Source of the DNA: Lepidodermella squamata
Lineage: Eukaryota; Animalia; Gastrotricha
DNA length: 64,000 nucleotides
Direction of reading: 5' to 3'
NCBI GenBank assembly: GCA_047495785.1
Contig: JBLDXI010000009.1
Location: 1,178,001 to 1,242,000 of the forward strand
Within the stretch, counting starts at the first letter, position 1, and each line of letters begins with the position of its first letter. This document shows positions 1,653 to 52,100 of the stretch, in pieces. A model generated the notes under the pieces. It was not told where the DNA came from and made no database searches. It was given only the letters and a program-made list of their open reading frames with translations. A program made the translations under genes and the position numbers.

Positions 1653-4053
1653 TTATAAAAAACCCTCAGGTAATTTAGATAGCAAAGATTCGTCGTCTTC
1701 GGAATCCTCGAAGGTTTCAGTACTTCCGACTTCTTTTGTGACCGTGAAAACGATGTCGTCGAGGCATGGTATTCGAGCCAATTTAGCGACAAACGACTCC
1801 TCATCTTCCGATTCGAAATCAAAATTGCGCTTGGCGGCTGCGTTCTTCATCGGAGTGGAGGTCTGAATAATCACATTTACCGAGTAATTCGGGCTAATAG
1901 TAGCTTCAACATCAACTCCAATTATTTCCAAGCTGATTAGTTGAGCTTTTATCGTCTCCGATCTTCCTAGACATTTTTCTTGGAAAGTCCACGAACCATT
2001 CCAGCTATTCAACATTTTTTCATCTCCGAACTCGAGAAATCTCAGGGCTGTCGAACTTTCAGATCCGCCTTAGAAAAAATGTAAAATAATGAAGAAAAAA
2101 TTGCCAACGACTTACTTAACACGAGAATCAGCTGGTGATTATCAGGCAACATCGAGCCATTTCGAACTTGCTGGGCATTGCGGATGCGGACGCAAACCTT
2201 TATCAAGGCGAAATCCGCTGCATAAGGAGGTAGCTGTTCAAGCTTTAGTTCGTACTCGGGCACACAGCGAGCCTTGCTAATTAAATTGAAAGCGAAGGTC
2301 CCCTTGCGGTTGCAAGCGATCTGTATGTCCATTGGCCTCGCTGAAGCCAGTAGCCTCCAGGATACGAAACCTGCGTTAGCTAAGCGTCGAGAGTAGTGGA
2401 CCCCGATTCCTTCAAGCTGTCGAGAATAGTAAGGGCTGTCGTGCCACAAGTGCTTGTGCATGATCTTGAAGAAAATGCAAACGGCGCATATTACATTGGT
2501 CTGTTTTTCCGAAAGAAGCTGCACAATTTCAAGCAGGCACCTGGCTATCCTTGCCCCGATTACTAACATTTTCTTTATTTCAGCGGCCAGCGACTTGTCG
2601 AGCTCTTCGCCAGATAGCACAGCTTGGAGTCCAATAAAAACCGTTGTCTCTAAAAGGTTCAATGTGACTGGTAGTTCGAACCGATTGAAATGCTCGAAAT
2701 TTCTCAGGTATTCAGGATCAATTTCCGCCACGGCCAATAAGGACAGCTCAGCGCTATCAGCCAGGAGCTGAAAGAGATCGCGAAGTTCAAGTTTGGGATT
2801 AGCCGATGCTTCCATGACACTTTTCATTGTCTTGTAGGAAATGGGGAGCGTAGCCATGACGTGACCAATCGGGGTTGATGAAACGAAATCGTCCCCATCT
2901 GGGCTGAATTTGATGAAATCAGCCGATGCCAAATTTTCCAAAGATCTATCGACTTGGTTGCAGGCAAATCGATCTGCGACTTCGGACAATGACTCGCCAT
3001 GCGACGCGAAGGCGAATTCGCTACTTGATGACGATTCAGATGACTCGGTTTGGTCGATATAATGATTGGTATTTTTGAACAGCCGCGTATAAAGAAACGA
3101 ACTTCTCACAAAGTTATAGCCTTCCTTGATAGATTTGATGTTTCCAAGGTCTATCTCTGCCATCAAAACATCTGCGCAAAAATATGAATTCGAAACAGTT
3201 CTATGATACGATAAACGAACCATTCATAAAGCGAAAAAGGCATGATTCAACCGGTTGTAACAAATCGGAACGATGAAGATCATCGATCGAGTAAGATCGG
3301 CAGTCTGGGCCAAGCCACTGGCTGAAATCAGATACGTTTGCGATAGCAGCCGAAGAACCGGCGACTATGCGAATTCGAGGCCCCGAAGATTTTCCCGACC
3401 TTAGAGGAATATTTAAAATTTCAACTGCAAAGGGTAAAATCAGTCACTCACAAATTTATTCGAGTTAGCATAGCTTCCAAGGTTGGTCCCGTTAAGGGCT
3501 CTGCGACCGCCTCAAGCCCATCAACCACAACAAGCGATATTTTCTGCATCAGGGATCGTCGATCTCGAAGAAGCGTGTCTGCTGTTTCGATGGTGCAGCA
3601 GACGATATCGCTTCTCTTCAATTCACCATATGGAGGAACCATGTAATCCGTTGTGACTTTCGTCACAGTAAAATCGCATCTCTTGCCCTTCTCAGCCAAA
3701 TCAAGATATTTATCGGATGATTCTGCTTGCCAGGAGGAAACTGAGAAAAATGATTACTCAAATGTTCGTAAAATAAAAAATCAGAGCTTTACTATAGATA
3801 ACTGAAGGCTTGGGCCGCTGCTGTCTTGATAAAGCTCGAACTAAAGCTAGGTCAAATAGCGTATGTATGCAAGATGCTGATGCGCTAATAACGATGTTTT
3901 GATCCGATTCAATCAACTGCAGGTAAAATATCAAGTATGAATTATCAACTATCAATTTTTGGAACCCACTTCTTTGGATACGATCTTCTGAAATTCGGAA
4001 AACTTTGTATTAGAGAACATCGGTGCGAAATTTCGGGGGATATCTGGCTGCAT
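1653..4053 (-). CDS. HFM1/Mer3-like paralog, copy B: inactive helicase (degenerate RecA1 + winged helix + Sec63/Ig-like + acidic tail; RecA2 absent)
   Basis: Inferred exons 4053-3970, 3916-3793, 3740-3452, 3399-3221, 3171-2116, 2068-1653 join into one open frame. The first three intron positions match copy A. WH/Sec63 motifs: PVESCL..DVLMAEI, FVRSSFLYTRLFKNTNHY, TPIGHVMA, LWHDSPYYSRQLEGIG, LISLEIIGVDV. Walker A reads SASASCIHT and Walker B reads VVVDGLE. Confidence 0.85.
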
Positions 4054-4370
4054 CTCCGCTAGTCAGCTTTCAGCTTCTCTTTGTCAATCAAATGTTAAAC
4101 TGGACTACGCGAAAAAGAAGCAAGGGAGTTACGGGTAAACAACAGTTTATTACACGATTCCTTCCGTCGCATTTATCAAACCGGAACCATTAGCATGCCA
4201 TCAATACCATCATCATTATGTTAGCGCACCATTACAAACCACTGCAGAGTTTATGACATGGATCATCACTGAACAAGGAAAGAAAATTTTACGAGCATCA
4301 GACCTCACAAGGGTTTATTTTAACATGATTATCATGAATCAAATTCAGTTCGCTTCGAAAGCTGCTTTCA

Positions 4371-7300
4371 TCATCCGTCCAAGTGGTTGTGTTTCTCGCC
4401 GTGAACTTGATACATGTGCTCCAAGTATCTGAAAATTTTGAATTATTTTTCATCATTTCACTGTAGGTTTCAAATAATCAAATACCGCTGCTGGCACTCG
4501 GACATGATTTGGCGTCTCGATTCAGAGTCGTGACCCATTTTGTAAATGCACTAAATAACGCAACGCATTTAATTTCAGTCAACACGAACTGCACACAGGT
4601 ATTAATTACCATAAATATCAGCAGGTGCAGGGCCAGCGCGTAGAAGAAAGCGATTGTACGCGCGACGGCATTTCGCAGCACCAATCGGCTCTAAGAATCA
4701 AAATGTTATCATTGTATATGCAAATAAATCGCCATGGCTATTATTAAAACAATTGAACTAACAAATCCAAGCGTTATCTTTTCATGCGGCCGCAATTGTT
4801 GATAGCTATTTGCTCGCTCTGCTTGCCGGAACCGGTTGAAAGGGTCAATACGCTCTTCGTAAGCCGACGAATAACGCGATTCAACATCGCCACGCTGCAA
4901 CAAATTTTATAATTAGCCGAAAACAAACATATATAAACCGCACTCAATTGTCGCCGCGCGCGCGGCATTTTGTTGTGTTTACCTGATGTGATGTCGCCGC
5001 GGCGGAACGAGATTGAAGAAATTTGACTTTCTCATACATGGCCACGTTGTCTTGGCGCGACTGATTCAGCTCTGCTTCCAAATGCTGTATGGCCTGCTGC
5101 TTTGAAACAAGTTGCTACGGTGGTGATACAGCGTATAGACCACATAGAAAAACACGAGATATTAAACTCACGGATTCAAGCTCCTGAGCGTGCATTCGAA
5201 AGCGTTCTCGCTGCTTCTGAACAATAGGAAGCAAATTGGCAGCCGCCTGTGGATCTTATTACATAAATGCGATAGAAATTTCTCATGTATCAAATAAAAG
5301 TATAATAGTATACCGAGCGAACTTTTCGCGGACGCATCTTCGCCTCTGCCGGCAAATTGCTATAGAAACAAAACACCTTAAAAGATGCACTTGAACACGA
5401 AGCGTCACGAACCTCGCTAATCGGTATGGTTTGCTCGGGCGTCTGCTGCTTCAGCGTGGTGGTATTCACCTGACGTAAATCTTCTTCAAGGTGCGCGATA
5501 ATCTTGTTTTTCTCCGCCAAAGTGGCACTCAGCTGCGAGCACAGCGATTCAGCTTGCGAGAAAGAAGCTGCCAAAAACAGGAACAAACAGGAGCATAATT
5601 ATCATTTCATCAATTATTTTATAATTGAATTGATTTTGGTTGTAAATCATCACATCGTCGAGTGCCCCCGAGTTAATAACAATCCTACTTCACCCAACAC
5701 CAGTTTTCCAGAGTTAAACACCCTATATGATTGAACAAGCGGAAAAATCACACGAATGTAATTAATATCATCATCTTGCATTATTTATTAATTTCTCAGC
5801 AGCATAAAAAACAAGAAACAAGCGCCGTAGAGTCTCGATTATCGTCAATCTTTGTCTTTCCTATAACCAACAACCACAACTGAAATTGGTTTGCATACAC
5901 GAGCCAAGAAAGATATACATATACTATAGATATATATGCTTGCCGCGGTGATGGTCGTCATCGGGCAACGCATTTAAAGATTTACACGATTCGTGTTTGC
6001 GGTTTCCGTGCGAGCAGCCAATCAAAAAATGATCAATTACCGTTCAGGTCGATACTTGATTAGCCAGTAATAATCATAAATAATATACTTTGCAATAATA
6101 ATATTATCGTAATAATATTTTTCAGCGCACAATTTTAATCACCATATCATGCTGCGTCGGCATGCAAGATAAAAACGAAGCAGAAAAAATCCGTCAATTA
6201 CACATGGTTACCGTGTAGCCTTTCGTTAAAACGATTCTCAAATTGTATGATTGAGGAATAACGATATAATAATTATATTAGCGTGGAAGATGAGGAATGA
6301 TTCCGTAACAATACCTGCGGGCGCACAAAACACGCGCGTCCCGCTCGCGATAAACATAAAAATTTTAGGCTACGATGATAGAATAATTGATATTATTATT
6401 TAGAGATATTCGAAGCAGCGTGCATACGTGAAGTTGTTATTTTAAAACCAATTGAAAGTTAAATAATCATCTTTTCATCAATAAAAGTACATATAGCCGT
6501 GATTTGCAATCATCAATATCATTTAGTCGTTTCGAAATAGCGTAAGTATACATATTGATTTCTCGAAAAATAGGCAAATCGTCAAATCAATAATAATATT
6601 ATCATTTTGCCACACTTTATGCTTCATAAAATTTGGTGCGCTCACAACACCCTGAATCTTTCAATATTTTAAAATCATTCTTCAATATATAATATAATAT
6701 AATTTTGAATATATCGGAAATCTTTCAAAAAACGAGATAAGATGGGTACTTAGTGTACGAGGAATGCTTGAAAAATTGTGTGTTCAAGTGGTGCGCTGCT
6801 ACAGGTAGGTAGCATTAATACGATCTTCCATCATTCGAATGTTGTATGATGCTATTTACAATGTACACAACGATGTGGTGACGCAGGTAATTTTAAAAAG
6901 CACTAGTCATGCTGCGGTAGCAGTACTGCGCAAGTGTTTGTATAATATATATGAATTCTGTTCGAAAAAGTTTACTGCCCGTTTAACGTACAGATTGTTT
7001 TGCAACGCCGGCATGTCACCGCCTTGAAGCGTTGCTGACTGAGAACATGTTGTTTGACGCGATAAAAGAACGAAAAAAATTGTATAAAATCGGTTAAATA
7101 CGGGTACGCTGAGTTGAAGAAGAAGAAGATGAAGAAGACATAGTTAAATCAGGCGAGTGAAAATTGTTCGCTCCACGTATTGCCACTAAATGAAATCGAA
7201 TCGGAGCGAGAATAATCACAAACCAGAGCAACTGTTTAAAAGCAATGTGAAGGTGATTTGTTTAAAATAGCTGTGCGATGAGATAATAAGTCGCAGCGTC

Positions 7301-10300
7301 TAATGCCTAGAGGAACTAAACTATCATCATTGGTCTGTGTGTTGATTAAACTGGCGGGCGGTTTTCTGTTTTCTTTTCACTGGTCCCCGCCGCCGCAAAC
7401 GCCAACGGGTTCGCAAGGACGGTCTAGGTGGTTGATCAGAGCAGCGGCACCGCCGTCTTCTTCTTCGGCATCCCACGCCATTGCTTCGTCCGAAACCCGA
7501 TTTTCAGCTGGGTCTACCCTCGCTTCAGATGAGGTAGAAGGCGAGCGGCTGAAAAAAATGAAAAATTTAATGAAAAAATAGTTCGGTGAAATTCCAAATC
7601 AAACAAACCATAGGTCCGGAAACTTTTCACCCGGAGCGTCATCCTCCATAGCAGTGGCCAAATTCCAAGCACCTCCATTCGGCGCTTCATCGTTAACGAA
7701 GGCTGGCGTGGGTGAGCTGGGATTCGCAACTCGTTTCGACGGATTGGCACTTTTCCGTTTCGATGAGCGGAAGACTGGGGCTTGATGCACCGGTTCCTCC
7801 TCGGTAATGGGAGGCGAGGGTTGCGACAAGTCGGTGGCAAAGTTCGGCGGTAGATCTGACAAGTCAACTGGTTCGTTTTTCGCCGATGGAACACGCGAGC
7901 CGCCGTTAGCGGACAAGTTGGTCCCGCTGGTTGACAGCGACGAGCTACGGTTCAGTCCCAAGTAGTGAGCAGGAGGTGGGGTCGACCCGTTATCGAACGA
8001 AGATGATGAAGACAAACTGGCACTTGGGATCGTAAAATCTATCGAGGAATAACTTTTATAAAGCCGAGACAACATATTCCAGATAAAATTACTTTGAATG
8101 ACAGTTGAGACCTGTCCCATATTTTGCTGCACGATTTGCTGTTCTTGAAGCCAAGAGAAGAAAGCGGCCATTTGTTCGTGACCCGACAGGGGCGGCCGGC
8201 CGTCACCGGTCTCTTTCGGCGAAACGAGCGCTGTCAATACGATTGCCTGCGAAGTCTCATTGCCGAGGCCAGGCAATGTGAACGGCTGCAGGGGCAAATT
8301 CGACCCGCTGCTGGCAGCCGCATCCAGCAACCGTTTCGGCGGCGGTAGAAGTTGGAATGCGAGTTCAGGATCATACAACCACAAAAACATTCGAATGTAG
8401 GGCTCACGACCTTTCAGCGTCAACTGCGCCCACGGTTTGGGCCTGTTTAACAAATCACTAACCGATCCCTAGGAAAAAATGGAAATTGAAAAAACTGCAA
8501 GTGACAAACACCTTAAAATTACCTGAGACATGCCTAAAACTTGTTCGGCAAAAACTTTCTGACCAACGCCAAACTGTGACAAAACGTCTTTAATTTGCTG
8601 AGCCACCGCTTCGGTTTTCAATTCGAAGGCAGCGCGGAGATCAAACCCAGCCGGGCCGATTGGGCCGTTGCCGGGCGACAAGTTGTTCGATTTGCTCGGG
8701 CCTAGCGACTGACGTTTCGGTGCACTGTGCGCCACGATAGGCGAAGACGGCCGCTTCATTCCGCTATTTGTGCTGAACGCCATTGAAATCGGCTCTTCAC
8801 TCATCGCATCAACTGGCGACTGCGCGGCGGGGGAAGATGCTCCAGATGGCTCGAAAGGATTACCTCCGACATTTCCGCTGCTTGGCAATAACGGCTGGAA
8901 AGATGACAAGTGACACTCGGAACATTCTTTCCGCGCAAGCCTATGGTGAAAAAATAATTAAAAATCCACCTTAATATTAGTTGAAAACACGAACTTGTGA
9001 ATCGCATGAGGGTCGTCCAAAAATATCGCCATTCTGATAAAAGGTTCGCGACCCTTGTTAGTTAACTGGCCCCACGGTTTCGGGCGGGATAGCTATAATA
9101 AAGAAATTATAATAACAAAATAAACGGGTAGTTATTTAATTTACCATATCAGATACTGAGCCTTGACTTAGTCCGAGTGTTTGTTCGCCAAACAGCCGTT
9201 GCGAGATGCCATATTGAGCCAGCAGATTTTTGATGCGCCGAACAAGCAGTTCAGTGTTAAGTTCCGCGTAACGGTCGAAGTCCTCTTGACTAACTGGAGG
9301 CAGCGATGGTTTTTGGAAGGTGGACGACGCCGACGCCATCGACTGGGCGGCCGATGACATGGCGGTGAGCGGCAGCGGTTTGGCGCCGAACCCGCCCGAG
9401 GACTGATGGGCAGGCAGCGGCGTGTTGGTCGCTGACGATGAAAGCGAGTCTTGGTACGACGAATCATTGTAACTAAATAGTGGAAGCGCGTTATTCGACG
9501 CCATGTTCGACGACGATACTGAAAGATCAAACGGCTTTGTGGCAGGAGAAGCCATTTTGTTGACCATGGGAGGCTTAATTCTACAGAAAAAAATGAATTA
9601 AAAACTAGAAAAAATCGACTGAAATCGCATGCATACTTGTTCGCTGAAGACGATAACGCAGCTGATTTACCACCGAATAGCGGGGTTCCTCGAGCCGGCT
9701 GATTAGGAGTGAAAGGCGAAGGTGTAAGACGCGGCGCCGCCTGGTTCTGAGAACTGCTGTTCGATGCCGGTGTCTGCAGGCCAAAAGTCGACAAAATGTC
9801 AGACGGCATCGTGTCGATCATTCGAATGCGCTCGTCCAACTTGGCCACCTCTTCGTTGTAGACCGCCTGTTGCTCGGTGTTGCCGTTCTTCTCCGCCGCC
9901 TGCATCAACTTGACCAGTTCCTGGCGCTGGACACTCGCGACGTAGCGCGCGATGTCCCGCAAGGACTTGTGCTGATCGGACAACGATTCGGACTGGCCCG
10001 ATGACTGGAGGTTGTTCGCGGGGGTTGTCAAACCAAGAGGTTTCGTCGAGTAATTTGCACCATTTTGACCGTCATAATCCGAAAAATCTTGCTCCTTCTA
10101 GCAAAAATATTCAAATCAAGAAATTGGAATGGGTTTGGTAACTAACCATCATTTCTTCGCGAGCATCTTCGAGAATTTTCGAAATTTTCTGTTCAGTTTC
10201 AACGTCTTCAACCGCTTTAGCAGTCAGGTTAGCACCAGGTGGACCCTTGCTGCGGGGTGCGAGGTCCTTGAGCTCTTGCAGGCAGTTCGGATTCGAAATC

Positions 10301-12573
10301 CAGACCGCCATTCGCCGGTACGACTCTTTGCCTTTTTCAGTTAACTTGCGCCACGGCTTCGGCTTGCTCAACAACTCGGAAACAGTGCCCTGGGACAAAT
10401 TCAGGACGTATTTCGCGAACAAACGCTGACCAATACTGTTGGCAAGGAGCATTTCACGAACTTGCTGTGCAAGTGTGCAAGTGTCGATTTCCTGTAATAA
10501 CAAAAACACACGTAATCAATAATTCAACACGTAATCACTCGAAAAATTACATCGCCGGGCGCTGGGCTGAAATTCTGCCATTGCATCGCAAAAATCGGGG
10601 TTGTTGCATTGCTTGACAAGTTGATGGCGTTAGTTGTCGCGGGCGACTGAGGCGACGAAACTGCAGCCATTTCGTCGGAGTAAGCCGGGCGTTTCATGCT
10701 CAGGTTCGTCGCGACATTGACGGCCGGCGAGCGGGAGGTTAGCGACGGAGGGTAGGCATTCGAGTTGTTAGCACCAGCCACACTACCAGTCGATGGGGAA
10801 GACGATTCATGAGCCGCCGACATGGGCGACGAGATACCGGACCACGACCCGGTTGCACCCGGTAGCTTCTTGGTGCCCAGGTTCGCAACGGCGCCCAGGC
10901 CGTTGGAGCTGTTCAGCTTCGCCCGCGCAGCAGCCGCCGCGGCAACAGCGGCCGACGCCGGCGTGACTTTGGACTGCGGTTGTAGCTGTTGTTGCTGTTG
11001 TTGGCGCTTGACGGCGGTTAGTTGTCCTTCAAACAAATTCAGCAGCATTATACAGCAGCTTGTGGCACGCCATCATCACAGCGCATTCTTTTCATCACCA
11101 CCAGACAACACCACAGCTAGCAGCTGAAACCAGAAAGCTGCCTAGCCTAACAATTAACAACTACCCCCGCTCTATGCATACTACCCAACTCGAAGGCACA
11201 GACGATGTCATTGATGGTCAAATTTTGGGGCAAAAAAAGGTTGAAAAAAATCAACGTACTTTGTAGTTGTTCATTAGCAGCACGAAGTTGAACAACGGTC
11301 GACTGTAAATTCTTGTTTTTCTCCGCGAAAAGTAACTCAACGGGTTGGTTAAGCGAAGAACCAGCAGTATCGTCCAAGCCGGGGGTTTGAGACTGAGATA
11401 GACCGCCAAACTCGATCGACTTCAACATTCTAAATACCGAAAATTTGATTAAAATAAACGAAAGATTTCTTTTTCTAGGGACTTACTCTAATTCGCGCTT
11501 GACATCCTCGTAGTCGCTCTGTTCCTTGAGGCGCTGTTCAGCACTGCTAAGCTGCGCTGTCTTGTTCGACAACTCGCGCTCGTGGTTGCGCACCTGCTCA
11601 GAGGTGGTCACTCGCAGCGCGTTGAGACTCGACTGCAGGCGGTGGACGTCTTCAAGGAGGCGCGAAATCTCCTTCTCGCGCGATCCAAGCTCGTTCTGCA
11701 GGCGCTCGGTCTCACTGAGACCTTCTACACCGGTTTGATCTTCACCCGCAGTTCGAGACATTTGAGACGTGCGAAGCTGTTCTCGCAGCCGCACAACCTC
11801 CATCTCAGCAGCAGCGGCGCGCTCGTTCGTTTTGTCGAGTTCGCCGAGCAGCATGTCCATCTCGGAACTTTGAGCCGCGCTCCGCTCGTCCAGCTTATTC
11901 TTCGCCTCCAACAACTCGGCCTGAGCGGCGGAGAGGCTGCTTTGTAATGTGGACGCGCGGTGTTCGACTTCAAGTTGCCGCCGGACCGCCTCCTGAACAG
12001 CCTCGTCGGCCTCGCGCTCCTTCTCGGCGAACTTGCGCACCAAGTCGGTTTCGCGGTCCCGCAGCGCCGCCTGCACCTTCGCCTCCATGGTCTCCTCGAG
12101 CTGTTTCAGCTTCTCCTTCAAGCTGCGAATCGTGTACTCCTGGTTCCGCACCTCGCCAAGTTCACTGTTGTACTGATCCAGGGTTTCGCGTAGTTGCTTG
12201 TTTTCGATTTCTAAATCGGTGGAGCGCGTGTTGCGCTTGTTCAGGCTCTGCACGTGCTCGTACAACGGGTACAAGTCTGGAATGCCGATGACGCGCTTGT
12301 ACACCGCTAAGAAGGCAGCTTCGGCCAGACGGCTGCGCCGCGATAGATTATCGACTTCGGTCTGAAAACTTTTGAATAACGGAGCAGCGGCCTTGCGAAC
12401 GTCCTACAACACAACAACCGGTAATGATGGGCAAGTGTTACGCAACGGGTAAACAAACGCACCTCGGACGCTACTTGTCGAAATTCTTTGCTTTGCTCGA
12501 CAAGAGCACGTCGACCAGCGTCGCTCTCTTCCTGACGAGCAGCCAATTCAGTGGCGGTTGCATCGAGTTCACG
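4371..12573 (-). CDS. CUX1: CASP golgin isoform of the cut/CUX1 locus (first coding exon not identified)
   Basis: Shared coiled-coil exons run from 12573 ([31 protein letters not shown]) to 11260 (phase 1 donor), then splice to CASP-specific exons 5567-4371. These include [39 protein letters not shown] and the C-terminal [19 protein letters not shown] with the conserved Tyr and His. Ends ...[24 protein letters not shown] on - at 4152-4147. Confidence 0.9.
5784..5789 (-). terminator. Candidate poly(A) signal of the Cux isoform (ends a ~1.6 kb 3' UTR, lies inside a CASP intron)
   Basis: AATAAA on the - strand about 215 nt before the first CASP-specific acceptor (5568). The AT-rich sequence 5790-7376 has no credible ORF. 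Confidence 0.5.
7377..12573 (-). CDS. CUX1: Cut/CUX transcription factor isoform: coiled coil + three CUT repeats, no recognisable homeodomain
   Basis: Same 5' exons as CASP, then acceptor at 11027 (phase 1). CUT1 ~10490-10290 ([39 protein letters not shown]). CUT2 ~9270-9010 ([42 protein letters not shown]). CUT3 ~8625-8370 ([42 protein letters not shown]). Last exon 7548-7377. Confidence 0.9.
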
Positions 12574-12660
12574 CTATAAAAGAGTAAGAAAAAACGATGA
12601 TGATGATGACGATGAGTGATTCGCTCTAAAATCAGGAAGAAGATTTGATAAAAACTCGTG

Positions 12661-13768
12661 ATCGATTAATTTGACAAGTTGCGCGCGCGCACGGCGAAAA
12701 ACACAGGCGGGGCTAAATCAATCAATCACGGCTCAATTTTCGCGTGTTAAGACGTGCCCAATTAGTACAATAACAATGCTGCAAAGTTTGCAGCAGCAGC
12801 GACTGCATTCATCCCCGCCCTAGGCGTCGCCGTCGCCGTCGAGCAAAAATCACGGATCAATACTCGATTAAAAGCTAGCGAAATGCACGCGCGCGAGATA
12901 ATGTTTCAAATATAATGGATTTTCTTTCAACTGCTCGATCCATCGAAAAACTTTTATTCGCGTCACGTTCGGCTGCTAAACGAACGAGCGATAGGAACGC
13001 GCACGGGTCCAAAGTTGTTGCTAATTTCTCGCAAACATATACACACATTATCGCATCGCTGCATATGAGGGGTGAAATGTAGAACACAACATCGCATAAA
13101 CGATCGAAATCGAAGCGAGGCGATGATGTGATGTGAAGCTCGTCGATCGCAGTACAAACAAGGCGCAGGCAAACACAGGCGAGTTGCAAAGCCAACACAA
13201 AATCGATTACCAATACATGGGCTCAGAGCGACGCGCGAATGTCGTAAAATTTCGTGGGCATCAATACACGAACGATATAGCCGAGAGCGAAATGAATTTC
13301 GAAGTAGCGATGTCGATAATAAAAATCAATGCCGAATCTTTGTCGCCGCGCGCTCGCTTTCTTCATCGCCTATAAACCAATACGGCTAATAGATGCGTGC
13401 GCGCGCGAGAGTTCGGCCATATGTCAAAGTAATATGCGGTGACGGGTTATCGATTTTATAGCACATCGATGTTCGACAAATAATATCAGCCCGCGCCACG
13501 TGCCTCTCTCTTTGCGTGCACACCGGCGGGCGGCGGGCAGGCGATAGGCGGCATTCCGCAGCTATCCGCCGATCAATTCAGTATCACAGACAACGCAACG
13601 AGCGCGCGCGCAAACAAAATCGATAATGGCAGACCGAAAAATATGGCATGAAATCAATCAATCACTCCGCCCTTAATTTGCAATACACATCGATTTTTAT
13701 CGCAATCGCAATAATGTGTGGTGACGAACCTGCCAGTCTGAAATATTGGAAGTCTTGACGAAATCGAT
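12661..13768. promoter_or_regulatory. Cluster of ATCGAT/ATCAAT (Cut-family consensus) sites in the cut upstream intron
   Basis: ATCGAT at 12661, 13202, 13449, 13465, 13619, 13689, 13763. ATCAAT at 12717, 12721, 12856, 13260, 13325, 13572, 13653, 13657. Confidence 0.4.
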
Positions 13769-21000: not shown

Positions 21001-24000
21001 TCAACTCGGCAGAATTGATGAAAAAGTAACAGCGTAAGGATTAAAAACCACCTGAAAAAAAGAAATCGACTATTAAGTATCGAGTTTTTTTTGGCAAGCA
21101 AACCTTGTTCAGTAGATCAGCGATTTTCGAAGCGGTGTGATCGGGCTGAATTCCGATAACGCTCCAGCAAAGCACGTCGGTAACTTTGACGACTCCCTGG
21201 CGGCACTTGCACATGTAGACTTCGTAAGTAATCATGTCATCAGGATCGAAAGCTGCATTCAACAAAACAGCTCCTGAAAAATCGCATGCTATAAACAATA
21301 ACAAATTCTCATTCACCTTCAGTCACGAACTAAAATAAATCTATAAATCATAACGCGGGATGATTGCGGCAATGGTAACTTTGGACACTTTTTTCTCGGA
21401 CTTGAATAGCTTTGCAACGACGTGGGATAAAATTACGGGCTTTAGTGCATAACGTCCCCGTCTTCCGAGCTTTCGATAGCTGTAAGGTCGGTCATTGGGT
21501 TAATAATCTTTTTGGAGAAATGTTATAGCAGTGCGATTTCGGATGGCGTATCTAGTATCTCTGCCGTATCTCCCTATAAAGGAAGATCCGCTCAGGACAG
21601 CATTTGGCATGTGAATTCCCATACCGTTAATCTCACATAATTCGCAAAGAAAATGCAAAAACCGGACGATTGCTTTTTCCAGCGCGTTCAGATGACCAAT
21701 CGGGTAATTTTGTACTGTATAAAAATGCGGCGGTGCAAAACGTATGGAAAACAGATGGTGCGCAAACTGTTCACATTTTTTCCAATTCGGACCGAAAAGT
21801 CAACAAAAATGTAAAAACACACAACGCTATTGCATTAGCAAATGATCGTCCGAAATTACCCTCTAATTGTCCCCAGTTAGCTATACATTTTTGAACCCAG
21901 GTAAAAATACAAAAATTTCAAAATTTGCAGTAAATTCAAGAATCACTATGTTCCCATTTGGTGAAAATCAGAATTCAGAAATTTAGAAGCAAGGGAAGTC
22001 CGAAAAGCATGTTTTGTCCATGACACCCCTCTGCACCGTTTCTTTTTGAAAAAATTAAAGAATGAACCTGTGTCGTTCGAAACTCGGTTAAGGCCAGCAC
22101 TCATAGTTTCATTGCCACGAACGCCAAATTTGTTGAGATCGGAGATTGTCAGAACGGTGGGAATCGGCTTCGACAGCTTCTGGTAGAATTTCTCGATGAA
22201 AGATGGCGTAGATTCGGCATTTGTGGTCGATTGCGAATAACATTCGCCGAAGAAAATTTCATCCGTGCAATGGACGCAACGGCCAGACATCGCTTTAACA
22301 GGCGGTTTAGGGAAAACGACTTTAACAGTCGGAATGCGATCAACAGGTTTCACTGGAACAGGCGAGGTGCCGTTCAAAGTCGAAGCAGATTCGGACCGAT
22401 CGCAGCAAGCACTGTCGAATAAATCCGGAGAAGTCGAGCTGAGACGAGTTTGAGGTGATGTCCGAGTTGAAGCTGGTGAAATCGTGCCACGCTCATATAG
22501 AGGTTCGACCTTTGCCGATACCGGAGACATGATCGAGGCAACTTTGTTGGCAACGGCAGCGACTGGTCTTGCCATTTGAGCGCCAAAAACCTTGGAAATA
22601 TTTGTTGGCGTGAAGGTAAATTTTGAAGCTGGCGGGGCTGGCAGGGGCGGTTGCATTGCCGCCTGCTTAGGTCCAGGTTGAGCAGCTGGTTTCGAAGCTA
22701 CCGGTGTGAGACTTCTCGCTTGGCTAGCCTCAGCCTCGAACTTCTCGCTCTGCATGAAGTTGATAAGGTTCGTGCGAAAATGGGGGAAATTAGTAAAAGC
22801 AGCACGTCTCTCGCGAACCCATTTACTGACTTTATCATTGCCCCGATAGTTTGGTTGGCAAAATCGCTCATCGCATAGAATTATGGCGCCCCAGTCTTTA
22901 CGATGACGTATGCAACGGCCTAGCGCCTGATTCAAAGCTCGAAAAGCTTGGCACTCATACCATTCACCGCCAGGCAGGATGTTTTTGTTCCGACAATGCC
23001 TAAAAATTGAAATCAAATCACGTGACAATGGTAGTATAAAATATTGTACATTTCATTGTACTGCCGTTTTTCTTTGACTTGGGGGTCCATCAAGGCTGGA
23101 TAGGGTATGCCAACAGCAATCACCGCTCTAGCGTAGTCATCCGCGAAATTCAAACCTTCGGAAACTTTTCCGCGGTAAACAGCGAGAAATAAAGCTCCAT
23201 TTGTGTTGCCTTCAACATTTCTGGCATTAGATGGCCCTTTACCGCGCTGAGACATAGGCGTAACGCCTTTGCGACGCGGCAAGCCCGGGTCGTCGAGTTT
23301 CCTCTTCTTATTCGGCTGCGTTAGCTTATTCCCGAAGAAGACCGGTTTTCGCTCACATTTGTAGTCATCTTCATCATCCATAGCATCAGCGTCGTCACTC
23401 AACACATCGTCATGATGGCCGGAATTCGGTTTCCCACAACTGGCGTAAAAATCTGCCAAGGTTTCTTCAAAGTGAGCTCCGCCACCGCTGGTTTCAATAA
23501 AAATATTTTTCGTACTAGCTATACGATCGTACATCCCGGTCGAACGCCAGCGTTCAACCATTTTTTCAATCAATCGATAACTGGTGAAAAATATGAGAAC
23601 ACCACCAGGGGTGACTGAACAGATCTCTTCCGTCAACTCGCCAATTCCATCTTGGAAATCAAAAGTTTCCGTGTTCTTGTAAACAGCTTGAAGAGGTTTG
23701 TTCCGCGGTGAAACCCCGATACAGGCAGCAAAAACCTGGCTTTTCCCAATAACATGTCCAGCTTCGAATTGAATGGGGAAATTAGTGCCAAGTTCCGATT
23801 GAAAAGTGGTCATCGGACTCAATGTCCCTGAAGCTAGAACAATCGTTCGAGCTTGTTCGACGATTTGTTGGAAAATAACAGCCGGGTTGAGACACCAAAA
23901 GTGTAAGGCGTAATTAATCTCGTGGCGGAAATTACCACCACCCCGGCGGCCGCGTCCGACGAATTCTCCGGGCCGCGATTGTGGTTGGTCTTCAACAGTA

Positions 24001-26290
24001 ACCTGCTGTTTAGTTACCAGCATTCTAAAATCCTCAGCGTGTTTATTCCCGTCTTTTTGAATCATTTGGCAAACGCCAATTAGGTGCTCCAAAATAACTT
24101 CAACTTTCACGGAGATTGCTGGTTCAGAGTTTGTCGACGTCGTTTTACCGCCGCGTTGCGTTTTTTCGATGACCTCCTCGGATTGCCGAGCGGCTCGCAA
24201 GTTGTCTAAATCTTGCGACAACTGAGTGCATGTTTCGTGATCGAGGCCGAGCCGAGTCTCAAGGTGGGCAACCAGATTCGCCCCACCCAGAATAACACTA
24301 GTCAGGACGTGACCTCCAACCTCGGTATCTAAATGCAGATGTTATGATAAACTAAATAGTTTGAAGCACAGAAATTTTACCGATAATTTTATTTCCCTCA
24401 TCTCGAATGTAGTTTTTCAGGCGTTCAAGCGTAGCCAACATCAGTGGGGTTTCCCAACCCTTATTCAAATCTTTCTCAGCTTCTTCCATTTCTCGAGAGG
24501 TAATTTGAATCGAAGCTGCTTCCCGGCACGCATCTTCGATGTTATGCGCTTCATCGAAAATCACGATATCCTTTTCGAGTTTGACGTTCATCTAAAAAAT
24601 ATCCATACAATTCGAGTCATTTCCAAAAATAAGCCGGTAGACCGTTATCACCTCACTTTCACGATTTTTATAAATTCTGCAACCTTCCTCAAATCTTGCA
24701 AAGAGAAATTTGGTAGATTTAAAATCAGCTAAGATTTTAGTTCTTATTTATTCAATACAGTGACAAGGGATGGTTTCGAAAAAAATCCGAAAAATCCATT
24801 GATATTACGCGGAATACCGCACGACGGGTTTTTCGGGCTTCCTTGGGTGAAGACTGGATAAAGAACGGCTTTTAGAGTGTTCAATTGTGTAAAAATGCCA
24901 AAATTCTCAGCATATAATTAAAAACTCAGCAAATTTTAAGACACCTATTAACCCTATATTTCACCTCTAATCTTGCGAAAAATCTTGAAAATTGAAGTAA
25001 CTAAATAATTACCGTTTTCCGAATAAAAGGGTCGATGAGGTAGCTATAAGGGCAGAATACTATGTCAGCCTTATTCGCCAGTTCTCGAGCAGCGTAGTAT
25101 GGGCAAGCGCCTTTCATGCGGGAAGCATCAACAAACTGCTCGAGGTCCCAAGCCTGGGTCAGTCCAGCTGAGTAAATCTTCTCAGAACCGTCCATGGAGG
25201 GGACCTTGTGTTTAAAAGAGCAGGCACCTCCGCCAGGCTGCAAATTGAACCCCAATTATAAACAAGACACAAAAATTCTGGACGGAAGATAACCTGCTGA
25301 AGTAGTTTTCTGCACTCATCGTTCTTGTTTCCACTTCTAACGACAACTTCATTGATGCACGTGTGTTCACGGCTCGCGAGGATGGACATGCTATTGCGAT
25401 GCCGAATGAGTATAGGTTCAAATTACGAACCAAAACTTACTTGGCATGCCGATATGCAGTTTTCGCAAGTTCGGAAGTCAACTGAGCTATCTGCTTGTGA
25501 GTTCTGGTACCGTAATAAATCTTCGGAACGCTGTAAATCAATCAATAATCAACATCAGCTACCCACTGTCGAGTTATAAATTACTAATATTTTTGGGAAT
25601 CGTTAACCATCTTCGGAACAGCAAGGTGGCAACCGCACTCGCACGCAAACATTTCTTCGTCAATGATTGTTTTGTTTTCCAAATCCTTTTTCTTCGGTTT
25701 CATCATAATCGAAAAATTAAATTTCAACGCCTTAGTTAATATTAACCTGGGATAGCGGCCTTACTGGTTTCTTGGCAATAGGCTTGAAATCTTCGTCGTC
25801 ATCATCGCCCCCAATAACCATTACGTCATCATCTTCACTCAAAACTTCTTCTTTCGTCAGATTTTTCACCGCGCAATTGCACGAATCGCAATCTTTTGAA
25901 CCATCATTTACCGACTCCAGCATTTTCTGCATATTTTCCGTGTCATGTTTCCGCTTTTTCACTGTTTGAATACACTGATTTTAAAGATTTTTCACAAGCA
26001 AATTTCACACCATGTTCTTCTTGTTGCCAGGCCAAGGCGGCGCATAGTAACGCCAGGGTTTTACCGCTTCCAGTCGGCGACTCCAGCAAGCAATTCTGTG
26101 AGCTTCTTATACCTTGGATTATCTACAGCAACCATTAATACATGAGCGCAACATCAGTACACATGTAACCAACTTTTGACATTAACACAGTTTGAGCCGG
26201 ATAGGGCTTATAAGGAAACCGTACTTTCACACCACCGATAACCATATCGTGCGAAACTGTGTATTTATCTTGTTCTTCATCGTTATTCAT
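21001..26290 (-). CDS. BRIP1: FANCJ/BRIP1 (dog-1) Fe-S DEAH DNA helicase
   Basis: Multi-exon gene starting MNNDEEQ...[15 protein letters not shown]. Motifs: [22 protein letters not shown]; FANCJ-type [14 protein letters not shown]; four Fe-S cysteines (REHTC, DEC, ACSF, ACPYY); [10 protein letters not shown]; [10 protein letters not shown]; LASGTLSP; [13 protein letters not shown]; [22 protein letters not shown]. Two last exons ~21272-21104 and ~21051-21001. Confidence 0.93.
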
Positions 26291-39200: not shown

Positions 39201-43763
<4,563 letters not shown>

Positions 43764-49159: not shown

Positions 49160-52100
49160 TCAACCGGAGAGAATTTGCTCATAAACATTAGTCAGAGCAT
49201 GAAAGTCCTCAGCATCCGACACCGGCAAGACCGTAGGTGGTACTGTTGTGACGAACCGACGGAACCGGGTAATGCAAGATCCTAGTTCTGGTTTGAGCTG
49301 GTCATTGAAAGCTACAGTTTGAGCAGCAATATTATTCGCCTGTTGCGCGAACGGGATATTCGCCCCGGTTGCACCAGATCGAATAAGTTGCAGATGAATA
49401 ACGGCTTGGGAAACGATCAGCTGAAGCAGCGAATGAAGTAGTGCAGCAATAATTCCATGATTAATTGCCTTGAACGCGACAAAAATTAATTAAATTGAAT
49501 ATTATAGCAGAAAATAAGTATACCCCATGCTTTGAGGAGGATTCGTGACCGCCGTCACTTGGTCTCCGCATTCGGCGAACCGTGGCGTGAAAACACGCAA
49601 ACAAAAAGCCGAAAGTGAGGCTATTAGGAATCCGCGACCTCGACCCAGCGCCGCCTATCTTAGGGCTAGAAGTACCGAGAGATACCAAGGAGAAATCTGC
49701 TTCAACCAAAGGGATGACCTGGCGCCCTCCTTGGAACTGTAATGTCGTAAGATCAACAATTTTATCGAATTATTTACATCTCAACTTACAATATCGCCAT
49801 GAACAATGTGAGTCAGAGTTGGGGAGACTCGAAGCAAGGCATTTGCAGCACATGAACACAGTTGAATGACATTGTCCTCAGTGGTTTTGCAATCAGCCGC
49901 AGTTGAAAGCGTCGAATGCGAATAGTTGTTCAGCAGAACGAAAGCGCTCATGAACATGACGCAGATTATCTCTGTCAAACTGAGATCCGAAGAAGTTTGA
50001 TACGCGGCTTGGTCTTGCACCGATAAGCGAGACGCGATTCGTTCGATCAATCGCGTCCAGGCCGAGCAGATCGCGAAGTGAAGGGCGTCAGATGACGGCG
50101 TCAAATGGAAAGCCAGCTTAGCAAAACGAGCCTTGTAAACCGCCAGAAATGTGCAAGTCGTCTCGGTGTTGACGAAATAATTTCGATCTCCATCGCTATG
50201 CATCAGCAAAGCAGTGATTATATCGATTACGATAACTGTGGCTTTTCTCAGAATCGCATCCGCGGTTGGCTGGGAACCGGTTAACGCCACCTCAAGGAAC
50301 GCGTGGTTGTAAAATGCGTTTGACAGGGACGACAAAACCCGTTTCACAGCAAAAATCTGCGATCTGTTTTCGCTGAACTCTGACGAGGCGTTAAGAGTAT
50401 GGACTACATTGAGCAAAAACGTCAACGCGTCAATATTCACTTCGCCAATATTGTTGTCTTGAATAGTCTTTGCAGTACATTCGACTAGTTTGCAGATGAA
50501 AATTTCGTTCCGAAGGATAACCGATGTCATGCCAACGCTATTGCTTAGCAACAACGCGTTTATCACAGATAGAGCAGCGGAGAAAAATTCCGAGGCAATG
50601 CGACTGTCCGATTCAGTAGCCATAATTTGGGTGATGACGTCAGCCGCTAGCGTTGGAAAACTTTCCTGGCAGCTAAATGCGATTGTTTGGTCATTAATGG
50701 CGTGTTTCAGCAGCTCGGCTAGTAAGGTCAGGGACAAAATGCCAGGTTCGTCAAACCTGATAGGTATTTCGTCACCAAATGCGTGTACTGACATCACCAT
50801 TCGACTTATCTCGGTACATTTGGCGAAAACCGACGGAGGGGTTGCGTTCAGTAAGGCGGCTGTTGACTTCATTGGCACGTTACGCATTCGAGAATTCGTT
50901 GAAAAGGCAGATTTCGCCCAGTTGCGAACCATAAGGACAATCGCTCGCAGAAACGAAGGTAGCAAAACGCGACTCAGTGCGACAGTCCTCTTCAGAGCAA
51001 TTGAATCTTGAAGCGATTGCAGATCTGTCAAGATATCAATACAGACCGAAGCACAGCTATCGATAATTTCCAACTGCTGGCGAGGTTTGACAAGCTGATT
51101 CGGTAAATTCGAAATAGATAGTGTATCTAAGAATGTTTGAATCGTCGCAGCTGCCGTTGAACAAGTTTGAGATAGCGGGAAGAATTCGCCTTCATCATCG
51201 TTCAACAATAGGAAGTCAAAAACCGATTCGAGTTTAGACGTTACCAGCCCATTTTCGAACATTGGCGTCAATTTTTGCACCAACGTAGCGTTCAAACCTA
51301 CAGAGCTACCAGGTCGGCAAAAATTGAACATTTCCAATGACAGAATATCCATCACTGTCAGGAGACAAGCGATTTGAGATTTCCTGTATGTTCCTTCCTT
51401 AGCAACATCTGCTTCCAGTGGGTAGACGATGGAAGCCCAGAAATTTTGCTGGCCACTTTCTTCAACCAACTGCTTCGCAAAATTCTGGTGTCGACCGAAT
51501 CGCCAAGCTGCTGCAATAATTTTCAAGGAGGCCAGGTATAGCGAAGGCAAGGATTGATACAACTCGAATCGAGCAATTATCGACATCACCAGGGGTCGAA
51601 TTTTAGGTGCTAAATCGCCGAAGAAGGCGGGTTGGTATTGCATAGTTGCCTCGACAAGACCCATTGTCGATTGGATGAGCATGAGACGAAAGTTCGCACT
51701 AGTTTCACTTGTCACGTACTTCTCCTCCTCAGAAATCGTTTCGACGATTACAGATTGAAACTGTTTTCGTTCATTCAACGACAAAAGACCGTTCAGGGAA
51801 AGACTATGGCCTAAAACTGTGACGACGAGAGCTACCAAATCGAAACAAAGCCGGCGGTTGTTTTCATTCAAACTCAACAGCCGATTTGGCGGAAACGAAG
51901 AATTTGTCAGATAGACAACAGCTCGAGCTAAATCAGCCGATCCTACGGCAATTGTTGATCCAACATCCCAATTATCAGATCTTACGCTGATGAATCGATA
52001 GAGACGAAGCATACACGAGAGGAATGCTGAAATCAGCGATTGTAGCGACGGTTGGACCAAATTTTGCTGATGCGTGTAAGCATTGGGTGGTTGACTGTTG

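What the first reader, a model, noticed from the sequence alone, without database searches (positions are those of the whole stretch)
7377..8400. Cut/CUX protein that appears to have lost its homeodomain
Known: CUX-class proteins have three CUT repeats followed by a homeodomain (helix 3 like STVINWFHNYRSR). Seen: after CUT3 the frame runs ~300 codons to the stop with only two tiny introns (8092-8039, 7608-7549). There is no WFxN motif there, nor in the downstream 5570-7376 interval. Distal landmarks seem kept (SSKRKSANP basic motif, acidic W-containing end SDEAMAWD), so the gene is not simply truncated. A possible eroded relic sits at ~8200-8060 ([13 protein letters not shown]...QVSTVIQ). Inference: a CUT-only Cux would bind DNA transiently through its CUT repeats and could not make the stable p110-type CR2-CR3-HD form.
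Basis: partly seen in the sequence, partly recalled or inferred. Interest (0 to 1): 0.8.

Follow-up and report, generated by a model that had tools for sequence, protein, structure and literature searches.

The report
CUX gene without its homeodomain
This small-genome animal's single CUX/CASP gene still makes a spliced, conserved protein with three CUT DNA-binding repeats, but the homeodomain that names the family is gone. The same loss appears in tardigrades, a thorny-headed worm and a tapeworm.

Summary
On the minus strand lies a canonical CUX/CASP locus: a shared CUX1_N/coiled-coil N-terminus, three CUT domains, a roughly 290-codon tail, and CASP_C exons downstream.

No homeodomain is detectable. 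Pfam finds none on the gene's strand across 4219-12717. A CUX-specific homeodomain HMM finds none in six frames of the whole window, yet scores 94-101 bits on control loci. The window has no N.

The tail keeps CUX landmarks that normally follow the homeodomain (the NKRKxxNPxR-type motif and the C-terminal I..L[ED]R/W-acidic motif). The domain was therefore lost internally, not by truncation. A deeply diverged relative (dS saturated) has the same architecture, so the loss is old and the gene is under selection.

The proposed "relic" cannot be told from chance (HMM E 0.08, hhalign 0.2%, shuffle p 0.076).

Homeodomain-less CUX proteins also occur in three eutardigrades, an acanthocephalan and a cestode. 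I found no paper describing this. The functional reading (CUT-only, fast on/off DNA binding, possibly a DNA-repair accessory role) is inference. The species was not identified, and a second CUX gene elsewhere in the genome is not excluded.

The parts
11260..12594 (-). Shared N-terminal exons (CUX1_N arm and coiled coil) used by both the CUX and CASP isoforms. The last common exon ends at 11260.
   Evidence: Pfam CUX1_N in 2 pieces, best E 2.1e-12. tblastn with Saccoglossus and bat CUX/CASP proteins covers 12594-12463 and 12403-11258. The loose end of the CASP RNA contig maps to 11260-11289, followed by a GT donor.
10527..11072 (-). CUX-specific Gln/Ser/Ala-rich exon region upstream of CUT1. 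Boundaries are approximate.
   Evidence: Open frame 10524-11048. It lies between the common exon and CUT1. Splice sites were not confirmed by reads.
10285..10494 (-). CUT domain 1, in a single exon.
   Evidence: Pfam CUT E 6.7e-27, 93.8 bits. The downstream intron 10098-10146 is seen in an RNA contig.
8985..9270 (-). CUT domain 2, split by a small intron (halves about 9142-9270 and 8985-9092).
   Evidence: Pfam CUT E 1.6e-10 for the N-half. tblastn finds the C-half '[21 protein letters not shown]' at 9092-8985.
8364..8624 (-). CUT domain 3, split by the 54-nt intron 8469-8522.
   Evidence: Pfam CUT on both halves (E 1.3e-06 and 6.1e-08). The intron is confirmed by an RNA contig. The C-half is 94% identical to the relative.
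8093..8363 (-). Conserved post-CUT3 linker. It includes the helix-1-like stretch [27 protein letters not shown] (about 8127-8207), which sits where the homeodomain should be.
   Evidence: 73% (linker) and 67% (helix-1-like) amino-acid identity to the relative although dS is saturated. No significant homeodomain similarity. AlphaFold2 predicts helices only at low confidence, mean pLDDT 47.
8039..8092 (-). 54-nt phase-1 intron, in frame and free of stops. Its read-through translation, [14 protein letters not shown], superficially resembles homeodomain helix 3.
   Evidence: Spliced out in the RNA contig. BLASTP aligned its translation to TNWFYNHRSRLRR of P0063. The resemblance ranks only in the top 0.44% of six-frame windows. 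The relative's intron has the same position and phase but is 55 nt, unrelated in sequence and contains stops. Saccoglossus and Dimorphilus have no intron in the homeodomain.
7609..8038 (-). Ser-rich tail exon carrying the conserved basic motif [13 protein letters not shown] (7728-7766), a likely nuclear localisation signal.
   Evidence: The motif [KR][KR]K..[AN]P..[KR] lies about 80-240 residues after helix 3 in arthropod-type and other CUX proteins, and is present in the relative's P0059. It is also seen in Dimorphilus P0030. The exon is 48% identical to the relative, with conserved islands.
7549..7608 (-). 60-nt phase-2 intron.
   Evidence: RNA contig joint. An intron of the same position and phase is present in the relative.
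7377..7548 (-). Last coding exon with the C-terminal CUX motif (...[10 protein letters not shown]...[10 protein letters not shown]...GGGDQ) and the TGA stop at 7377-7379.
   Evidence: Sequence. It matches the widespread C-terminal pattern W[DE]..[DE]...I..LE...[DE]W[DE]F of CUX proteins. The relative has SWEGDEESDRCGLINRLERNC...GGGDWDK (read).
6142..7376 (-). 3'UTR of the CUX isoform, at least 1.2 kb.
   Evidence: The same 2298-nt RNA contig continues unspliced from the stop to 6142. A further contig lies at 5781-6075.
4480..5567 (-). CASP-specific exons (5413-5567, 5314-5359, 5172-5254, 4983-5114, 4763-4894, 4610-4690, up to 4550) encoding CASP_C and the transmembrane tail. They are reached by the splice 11260->5567, which skips all CUT exons.
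   Evidence: Pfam CASP_C on 5 pieces, best E 6.6e-11. A 954-nt spliced RNA contig shows six GT..AG joints, and its loose end maps to 11260-11289.

Best explanation
This is the animal's orthologue of the CUX/CASP locus. In it the homeodomain of the CUX isoform has been lost by old, in-place erosion of the segment between CUT3 and the conserved post-homeodomain motifs.

The locus still produces two products by alternative splicing and alternative 3' ends:
- a CASP golgin, by the splice 11260->5567;
- a CUT-only nuclear protein with an N-terminal coiled coil, three intact CUT domains, a conserved linker, a basic KRK motif (a likely nuclear localisation signal) and the C-terminal CUX motif.

The architecture, the splicing, the absence of any detectable homeodomain, and conservation with a deeply diverged relative are all shown here.

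The mechanism is inferred. The protein would contact DNA only through pairs of CUT domains. That predicts fast on/off binding of the CCAAT-displacement type rather than the stable CUT-plus-homeodomain mode. It could also keep the homeodomain-independent CUT-domain role as an accessory factor of base-excision repair.
For: Locus identity:
- CUX1_N, three CUT domains and CASP_C lie on one strand.
- Both isoforms are seen as spliced RNA contigs.

Absence of the homeodomain:
- Motif scan and no N.
- Pfam on all minus-strand pieces.
- CUX-homeodomain HMM in six frames of the whole window, with positive controls at 94-101 bits.

Not a truncation:
- The post-homeodomain KRK motif and the C-terminal motif are retained.

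Old and under selection:
- The relative's loci L001-L004 have the same exon/intron positions and no homeodomain.
- dS is saturated, yet amino-acid identity is 94% in the CUT3 C-half, 73% in the linker and 48% in the tail.

Precedent:
- Hypsibius, Ramazzottius and Paramacrobiotus CUX have CUX1_N (not detected in the Paramacrobiotus models, where BLASTP finds only a weak N-terminal match) and three CUT domains but no homeodomain. The Paramacrobiotus locus has none within 10 kb either side.
- The Neoechinorhynchus locus likewise has none. Schistocephalus transcripts lack it too.

Mechanism, from the literature:
- C1C2 binds DNA with very fast on/off rates, whereas any CUT-plus-homeodomain protein binds more stably.
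- C1C2 fused to a nuclear localisation signal is enough to speed oxidative-damage repair and has no transcription-activation potential (PMC8231510).
Against: - Only this 64-kb window could be searched. A second CUX-type gene with a homeodomain elsewhere in the genome is not excluded.
- RNA evidence comes from assembled contigs, which drop rare isoforms. A minor isoform that retains the in-frame 54-nt intron, or uses other 3' exons, cannot be excluded.
- DNA-binding kinetics, nuclear localisation and a repair role are all extrapolated from mammalian CUX1.
- The species and phylum were not identified, so the loss cannot be dated on a tree.
Confidence: 0.85

Rival explanations
1. A cryptic, highly diverged homeodomain survives. 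The conserved stretch [24 protein letters not shown] would be the N-terminal arm plus helix 1. What follows, possibly with retention of the in-frame intron 8039-8092 ([14 protein letters not shown] as helix 3), would still form a DNA-binding or protein-binding three-helix module.
For: - BLASTP extensions from CUT3 align this region with the homeodomains of P0006 and P0063, including the intron-coded stretch against helix 3.
- The best helix-1-like and helix-3-like windows of the ORF are colinear, 34 residues apart against 40 expected.
- The intron is a multiple of three and free of stops.
- The helix-1-like stretch is 67% conserved in the relative.
- AlphaFold2 predicts a helix at residues 96-114.
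Against: - HMM score -0.9 bits, E 0.08 even with a search space of one sequence.
- hhalign probability 0.2%. Shuffle p=0.076.
- W48, F49 and R53 are absent.
- STVI is not conserved in the relative.
- The relative's intron is 55 nt, has stops and is unrelated in sequence.
- The RNA contig shows the intron removed.
- AlphaFold2 confidence is low, mean pLDDT 47.
Confidence: 0.07
2. The homeodomain function is not lost from the organism. A paralogous CUX gene, or a distant alternative 3' exon outside the window, supplies a CUT-plus-homeodomain protein, and this locus is a subfunctionalised CUT-only copy.
For: - Only 64 kb of the genome could be examined.
- Vertebrates carry two CUX genes.
- Contig-based RNA evidence can miss rare isoforms.
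Against: - This copy is the one coupled to the CASP exons, which marks the ancestral CUX locus (PMC10515288; PMC11789633).
- The CUT3 exon is joined in one RNA contig to the tail, the stop and a long 3'UTR.
- No homeodomain is found anywhere in the window or in the relative's 15-kb loci.
- The exhaustive protein search found no closer CUX with a homeodomain.
Confidence: 0.06
3. The CUX-specific part is a decaying pseudo-isoform. Only the CASP product matters, and the CUT exons are drifting.
For: The tail is Ser-rich and low in complexity, and only 48% identical to the relative.
Against: - All exons are open with canonical splice sites and are transcribed.
- The CUT domains score well (93.8 bits for CUT1).
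- The CUT3 C-half is 94% identical to the relative while synonymous sites are saturated.
- The conserved motifs persist in both species.
Confidence: 0.02

Closest known systems
CUX/CASP complex locus (human CUX1/CASP; C. elegans ceh-44/cone-1; amphioxus CUX/CASP)
   Same: - A shared N-terminal coiled coil, and three CUT domains in CUX-specific exons.
- CASP_C and transmembrane exons downstream of the CUX exons, as in nematodes and amphioxus (PMC10515288).
- Alternative splicing that yields a golgin or a nuclear CUT protein.
- Conserved post-homeodomain KRK and C-terminal motifs.
   Different: No homeodomain after CUT3. A lineage-specific intron lies where helix 3 would be. Saccoglossus and Dimorphilus encode CUT3, the homeodomain and the C-terminus in one exon.
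Eutardigrade CUX proteins (Hypsibius exemplaris P0317, Ramazzottius varieornatus P0318, Paramacrobiotus metropolitanus P0098/P0291), annotated 'homeobox protein cut-like 1'
   Same: CUX1_N (in Hypsibius and Ramazzottius) plus three CUT domains, no homeodomain, and a C-terminus ending in an acidic ...DKDW motif. The Paramacrobiotus locus has no homeodomain within 10 kb either side.
   Different: - Tail sequences are unrelated to this one, and N-terminal identity is only 28%. The loss is therefore probably independent.
- The next gene called 3' of the Paramacrobiotus locus is an unrelated one on the opposite strand. CASP exons were not specifically searched for.
Acanthocephalan (Neoechinorhynchus agilis P0043) and cestode (Schistocephalus solidus P0038/P0287) CUX proteins
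   Same: Three CUT domains, no homeodomain, and an RRKR..(N/D)P.R motif retained in the tail. CUT1 is 60-62% identical to this gene's CUT1.
   Different: No detectable tail or N-terminal similarity to this gene. The cestode case rests on transcripts only. Whether these losses share an origin with this one is unknown.
Engineered mammalian C1C2-NLS / the CR1CR2 activity of full-length p200 CUX1
   Same: A CUT-only DNA-binding configuration with a separate nuclear localisation signal. It shows fast on/off DNA binding and homeodomain-independent stimulation of base-excision repair enzymes (PMC8231510).
   Different: That is a laboratory construct, or one activity of a homeodomain-containing protein. 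Here the CUT-only state is the natural gene product. Function was not tested.

Membership tests
CUX subclass of CUT-class homeobox genes | Three CUT domains | tested here: met
   Pfam CUT on five pieces forming three domains. tblastn with Saccoglossus CUX places CUT1-3.
CUX subclass of CUT-class homeobox genes | CUT-type homeodomain C-terminal to CUT3 | tested here: not met
   No Pfam Homeodomain at E<=0.1. The CUX-homeodomain HMM finds nothing in six frames of 64 kb. On the expected segment it scores -0.9 bits. hhalign probability 0.2%. Controls score 94-101 bits.
CUX subclass of CUT-class homeobox genes | N-terminal coiled coil (CUX1_N) shared with CASP by alternative splicing in one locus | tested here: met
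   CUX1_N E 2.1e-12 and CASP_C E 6.6e-11 on the same strand. RNA contigs show both isoforms, with the junction 11260->5567.
CUX subclass of CUT-class homeobox genes | Conserved post-homeodomain motifs (NKRKxxNPxR-type basic motif; C-terminal I..LE...W[DE]F) | tested here: met
   [13 protein letters not shown], and AWDAEEED...LINHLDR. The terminal W is kept in the relative (GGGDWDK) but not here (GGGDQ).
CASP golgin (CASP_C family, PF08172) | CASP_C domain ending in a C-terminal transmembrane segment | tested here: met
   CASP_C matches profile positions 3-52, 118-152, 174-216 and 219-249 on successive exons. A hydrophobic stretch, [17 protein letters not shown], is in ORF 4478-4684. The CASP transcript is spliced.
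Functional homeodomain (PF00046) | Invariant W48, F49, N51 and R53 in helix 3, and the three-helix fold | tested here: not met
   No W[FY]xNx[RK] in the gene. The candidate helix 3 reads F-I-W-N-M-L and lies in a spliced-out intron. The AlphaFold2 model has low confidence.

The most novel reading that the evidence does not exclude
The homeodomain has been eroded independently from the single CUX/CASP locus in at least four protostome lineages: this one, eutardigrades, an acanthocephalan and a cestode. In each, the three CUT repeats and the flanking motifs stay under selection. If so, the conserved core function of CUX does not depend on the homeodomain (CUT-repeat DNA scanning or displacement, or support of DNA repair). 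It would also mean that homeodomain-based surveys scoring 'Cux lost' (for example in flukes and monogeneans, PMC4040987) may be missing surviving CUT-only genes.
Probability: 0.35. Interest if true: 0.65.

Novelty: new variant of a known kind. Interest (0 to 1): 0.45.

Why it matters
CUX proteins are textbook homeodomain transcription factors. They include Drosophila cut, mammalian CUX1/2 and C. elegans ceh-44, the last a regulator of pan-neuronal identity.

A naturally occurring, conserved, expressed CUX that keeps everything except the homeodomain is a natural experiment. It separates the CUT-repeat functions (fast DNA binding, CCAAT displacement, base-excision repair accessory activity) from the stable CUT-plus-homeodomain mode.

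The same state occurs in tardigrades, an acanthocephalan and a cestode. This suggests the loss is a repeatable outcome in these lineages. It also warns that homeodomain-based gene inventories under-report such genes, and that annotation pipelines name them 'homeobox protein' although they have no homeobox.

Tried and rejected
Searches for a homeodomain, all negative:
- Regex for WFxN-type motifs in all six frames.
- Pfam on 112 minus-strand pieces.
- Custom CUX-homeodomain HMM in six frames of the window and of the relative's loci.

The relic:
- Tests on the proposed relic were all non-significant: HMM, ungapped PSSM ranks, hhalign and a colinear shuffle.
- I considered 'intronization of helix 3', prompted by the BLASTP alignment. 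I rejected it as unsupported. The relative has an intron at the same site and phase with unrelated sequence and stops, and synonymous sites are saturated, so a neutral intron could not have kept an ancestral signal.
- AlphaFold2 on the post-CUT3 exon gave mean pLDDT 47. No fold search was run on it.

Other checks:
- Rfam on the window gave no hit.

Identifying the species failed:
- The best named hits of the neighbouring DnaJ/Tid1 gene are 50-58% identical, spread across protostomes.
- An N-terminal tree was uninformative.
- CUT1 similarity ranking gave no clear affinity.
- The metagenome sample name was not found in any paper.

Literature:
- Searches for homeodomain-less CUX found nothing explicit.
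- Burglin and Cassata 2002 is not held in the library.
Full report
**1. What is there**

The minus strand of 4.4-12.7 kb carries one gene with the full signature of the CUX/CASP complex locus.
- Pfam finds CUX1_N and coiled-coil matches at 11.3-12.6 kb, and five CUT matches that form three CUT domains (CUT1 10285-10494, CUT2 about 8985-9270, CUT3 8364-8624).
- Pfam also finds five successive CASP_C matches at 4.5-5.6 kb.
- tblastn with Saccoglossus CUX confirms the order.
- The window has no N.

**2. Transcript evidence**

One public run (X1) is clearly RNA, because its contigs carry GT..AG joints.
- One 2298-nt contig joins the CUT3 exon to the tail. It removes exactly 8469-8522, 8039-8092 and 7549-7608, then continues unspliced past the stop (TGA 7377-7379) to 6142.
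- The CUX isoform therefore ends here, with a 3'UTR of at least 1.2 kb.
- A second, 954-nt contig is the CASP isoform. It has six small introns between 4551 and 5412. Its upstream loose end maps to 11260-11289, so the splice is 11260->5567 and skips every CUT exon.
- This is the nematode/amphioxus arrangement, with the CASP exons downstream of the CUX exons (PMC10515288; PMC11789633).
- DNA contigs of a second run (X2) tile the region with 0.5-1.8% differences, so there is no assembly gap.

**3. Is a homeodomain anywhere?**

No.
- No W[FY]xNx[RK] motif lies in the gene's frames.
- None of 112 minus-strand stop-to-stop pieces of 4219-12717 matches Pfam Homeodomain at E<=0.1.
- I built a CUX-specific homeodomain HMM from 75 homeodomains of CUX proteins returned by the exhaustive protein search. 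In six frames of the whole 64-kb window its best score is 5.4 bits, in an unrelated place.
- The same HMM scores 100.7 bits on the Dimorphilus CUX locus and 94.3 bits on the Saccoglossus locus.

**4. Not a truncation**

The tail keeps motifs that lie after the homeodomain in other CUX proteins.
- [13 protein letters not shown] (7728-7766) matches the [KR][KR]K..[AN]P..[KR] motif found about 80-240 residues after helix 3 in many protostome CUX proteins. Examples are VNKRKSSNPQRA, SKRRKCAAPQRV and, in Dimorphilus, SNKRKAAKPKRV.
- The C-terminus [10 protein letters not shown]...ALINHLDR...GGGDQ matches the widespread pattern W[DE]E...I..LE...[DE]W[DE]F.
- The homeodomain was therefore lost internally.
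- In Saccoglossus and Dimorphilus, CUT3, the homeodomain and the C-terminus lie in one exon. The intron at 8039-8092 is thus absent from both outgroups examined.

**5. A deeply diverged relative shows the same state**

The exhaustive search found two fragments, P0001 and P0059, that match the tail itself. They lie on metagenome contigs (L001-L004) from a related species.
- That locus has CUX1_N, three CUT domains, the tail and CASP_C in the same order.
- Its introns sit at the same positions and phases.
- It has no homeodomain in six frames.
- Synonymous sites are saturated, with third-position identity 0.29-0.41.
- Amino-acid identity is nevertheless 94% in the CUT3 C-half, 73% in the linker, 67% in the helix-1-like stretch and 48% in the tail, with conserved islands.
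- The loss is therefore old and the homeodomain-less gene is under purifying selection. It is not a pseudogene.

**6. The 'relic'**

BLASTP extensions from CUT3 do align [23 protein letters not shown] with the homeodomain arm and helix 1. They also align the read-through of the 54-nt intron ([14 protein letters not shown]) with helix 3, TNWFYNHRSRLRR. I tested this in several ways.
- The HMM on the 80-residue stretch alone gives -0.9 bits, E 0.08.
- hhalign of the two-species alignment against 28 CUX homeodomains gives probability 0.2%.
- Ungapped PSSM windows rank in the top 0.3-0.4% of six-frame windows. That is what the best window of a 289-residue ORF is expected to reach by chance.
- A shuffle test of the colinear pair gives p=0.076.
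- STVI is not conserved in the relative.
- The relative's intron is 55 nt, has stops and is unrelated in sequence.
- AlphaFold2 gives mean pLDDT 47.

The relic is possible but cannot be told from chance. The conserved helix-1-like stretch is best treated as a conserved linker motif of unknown role.

**7. Not unique**

Among hits of the protein search, several long CUX proteins lack a homeodomain.
- Pfam confirms three CUT domains and no homeodomain in Paramacrobiotus metropolitanus, Neoechinorhynchus agilis and Schistocephalus solidus.
- It confirms the same in Hypsibius exemplaris and Ramazzottius varieornatus.
- The Paramacrobiotus and Neoechinorhynchus genomic loci have no homeodomain within 10 kb either side, and no N.
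- Their tails are unrelated to this one, so the losses look independent. This was not tested on a tree.
- Nematode, arthropod, annelid, hemichordate and vertebrate CUX proteins keep the homeodomain.
- I found no paper that describes a homeodomain-less CUX orthologue.
- Homeodomain-based surveys list 'Cux' as lost in flukes and a monogenean (PMC4040987).

**8. Mechanism (inferred)**

In mammalian CUX1 a single CUT domain does not bind DNA. C1C2 binds with very fast on/off rates, and any CUT-plus-homeodomain combination binds more slowly and more stably. C1C2 fused to a nuclear localisation signal is sufficient to accelerate repair of oxidative damage and has no transcription-activation potential (PMC8231510). 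By analogy:
- this protein should bind DNA only through CUT pairs, transiently;
- it cannot form a stable p110-like CUT-plus-homeodomain complex;
- it may retain the repair-accessory role;
- the KRK motif may replace the nuclear import function that the review links to the homeodomain.

None of this was tested here.

**9. Limits**

- The species was not identified.
- Only this window could be searched, so a second CUX gene with a homeodomain elsewhere is not excluded.
- RNA evidence is from contigs, which drop rare isoforms.

**10. Verdict**

The relic is unproven and the function is inferred. This is a new variant of a known gene kind, and one more instance of a recurrent but apparently undescribed loss.

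Noticed in passing
window 8039-8092 (-): The 54-nt intron is a multiple of three, has no stop in the reading frame, and its translation ([14 protein letters not shown]) looks like homeodomain helix 3. The orthologous intron in the relative (L001 10353-10407) is 55 nt with stops. The resemblance is probably chance, but retention of the intron was not tested with raw reads.
   Followed up: partly
window 49781-52780 (-): A 999-codon open frame with no Pfam match at E<=0.001. It is a large orphan ORF in a gene-dense region.
   Followed up: no
window 21946-24221 (-): Two adjoining long ORFs (360 and 402 aa) each carry part of a Helicase_C_2 domain (XPD/RTEL1/FANCJ-type helicase). They overlap by 16 nt in different frames, which suggests a tiny intron or a frameshift.
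   Followed up: no
window 54785-56113 (-): A single-exon mitochondrial DnaJA3/Tid1-like gene (DnaJ, CXXCXGXG and DnaJ_C domains). Its best match is a 79%-identical protein from ENA metagenomes. Every named animal hit listed is only 49-58% identical, so no close relative of this genome is annotated in the database.
   Followed up: partly
window 9093-9796: Low-depth RNA contigs of run X1 show five 'opposite strands' joints in the Ser/Pro-rich region between CUT1 and CUT2. They may be assembly chimeras or antisense transcription.
   Followed up: no
L008 (Paramacrobiotus), P0317 (Hypsibius), P0318 (Ramazzottius), L007 (Neoechinorhynchus): Public annotations name the tardigrade proteins 'homeobox protein cut-like 1', although they have three CUT domains and no homeodomain. 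The tardigrade proteins end in ...DKDW(S).
   Followed up: partly
window 2042-3223 (-): An ORF with a Sec63 Brl domain and an SNRNP200-type winged helix. This fits the HFM1/Mer3-like paralogue noted by another reader at 1653-4053.
   Followed up: no
window 59597-60424 (+) and 39201-39941 (-): Exons of a WD40_4 (coronin-type) protein and of a protein kinase. Both look ordinary.
   Followed up: no
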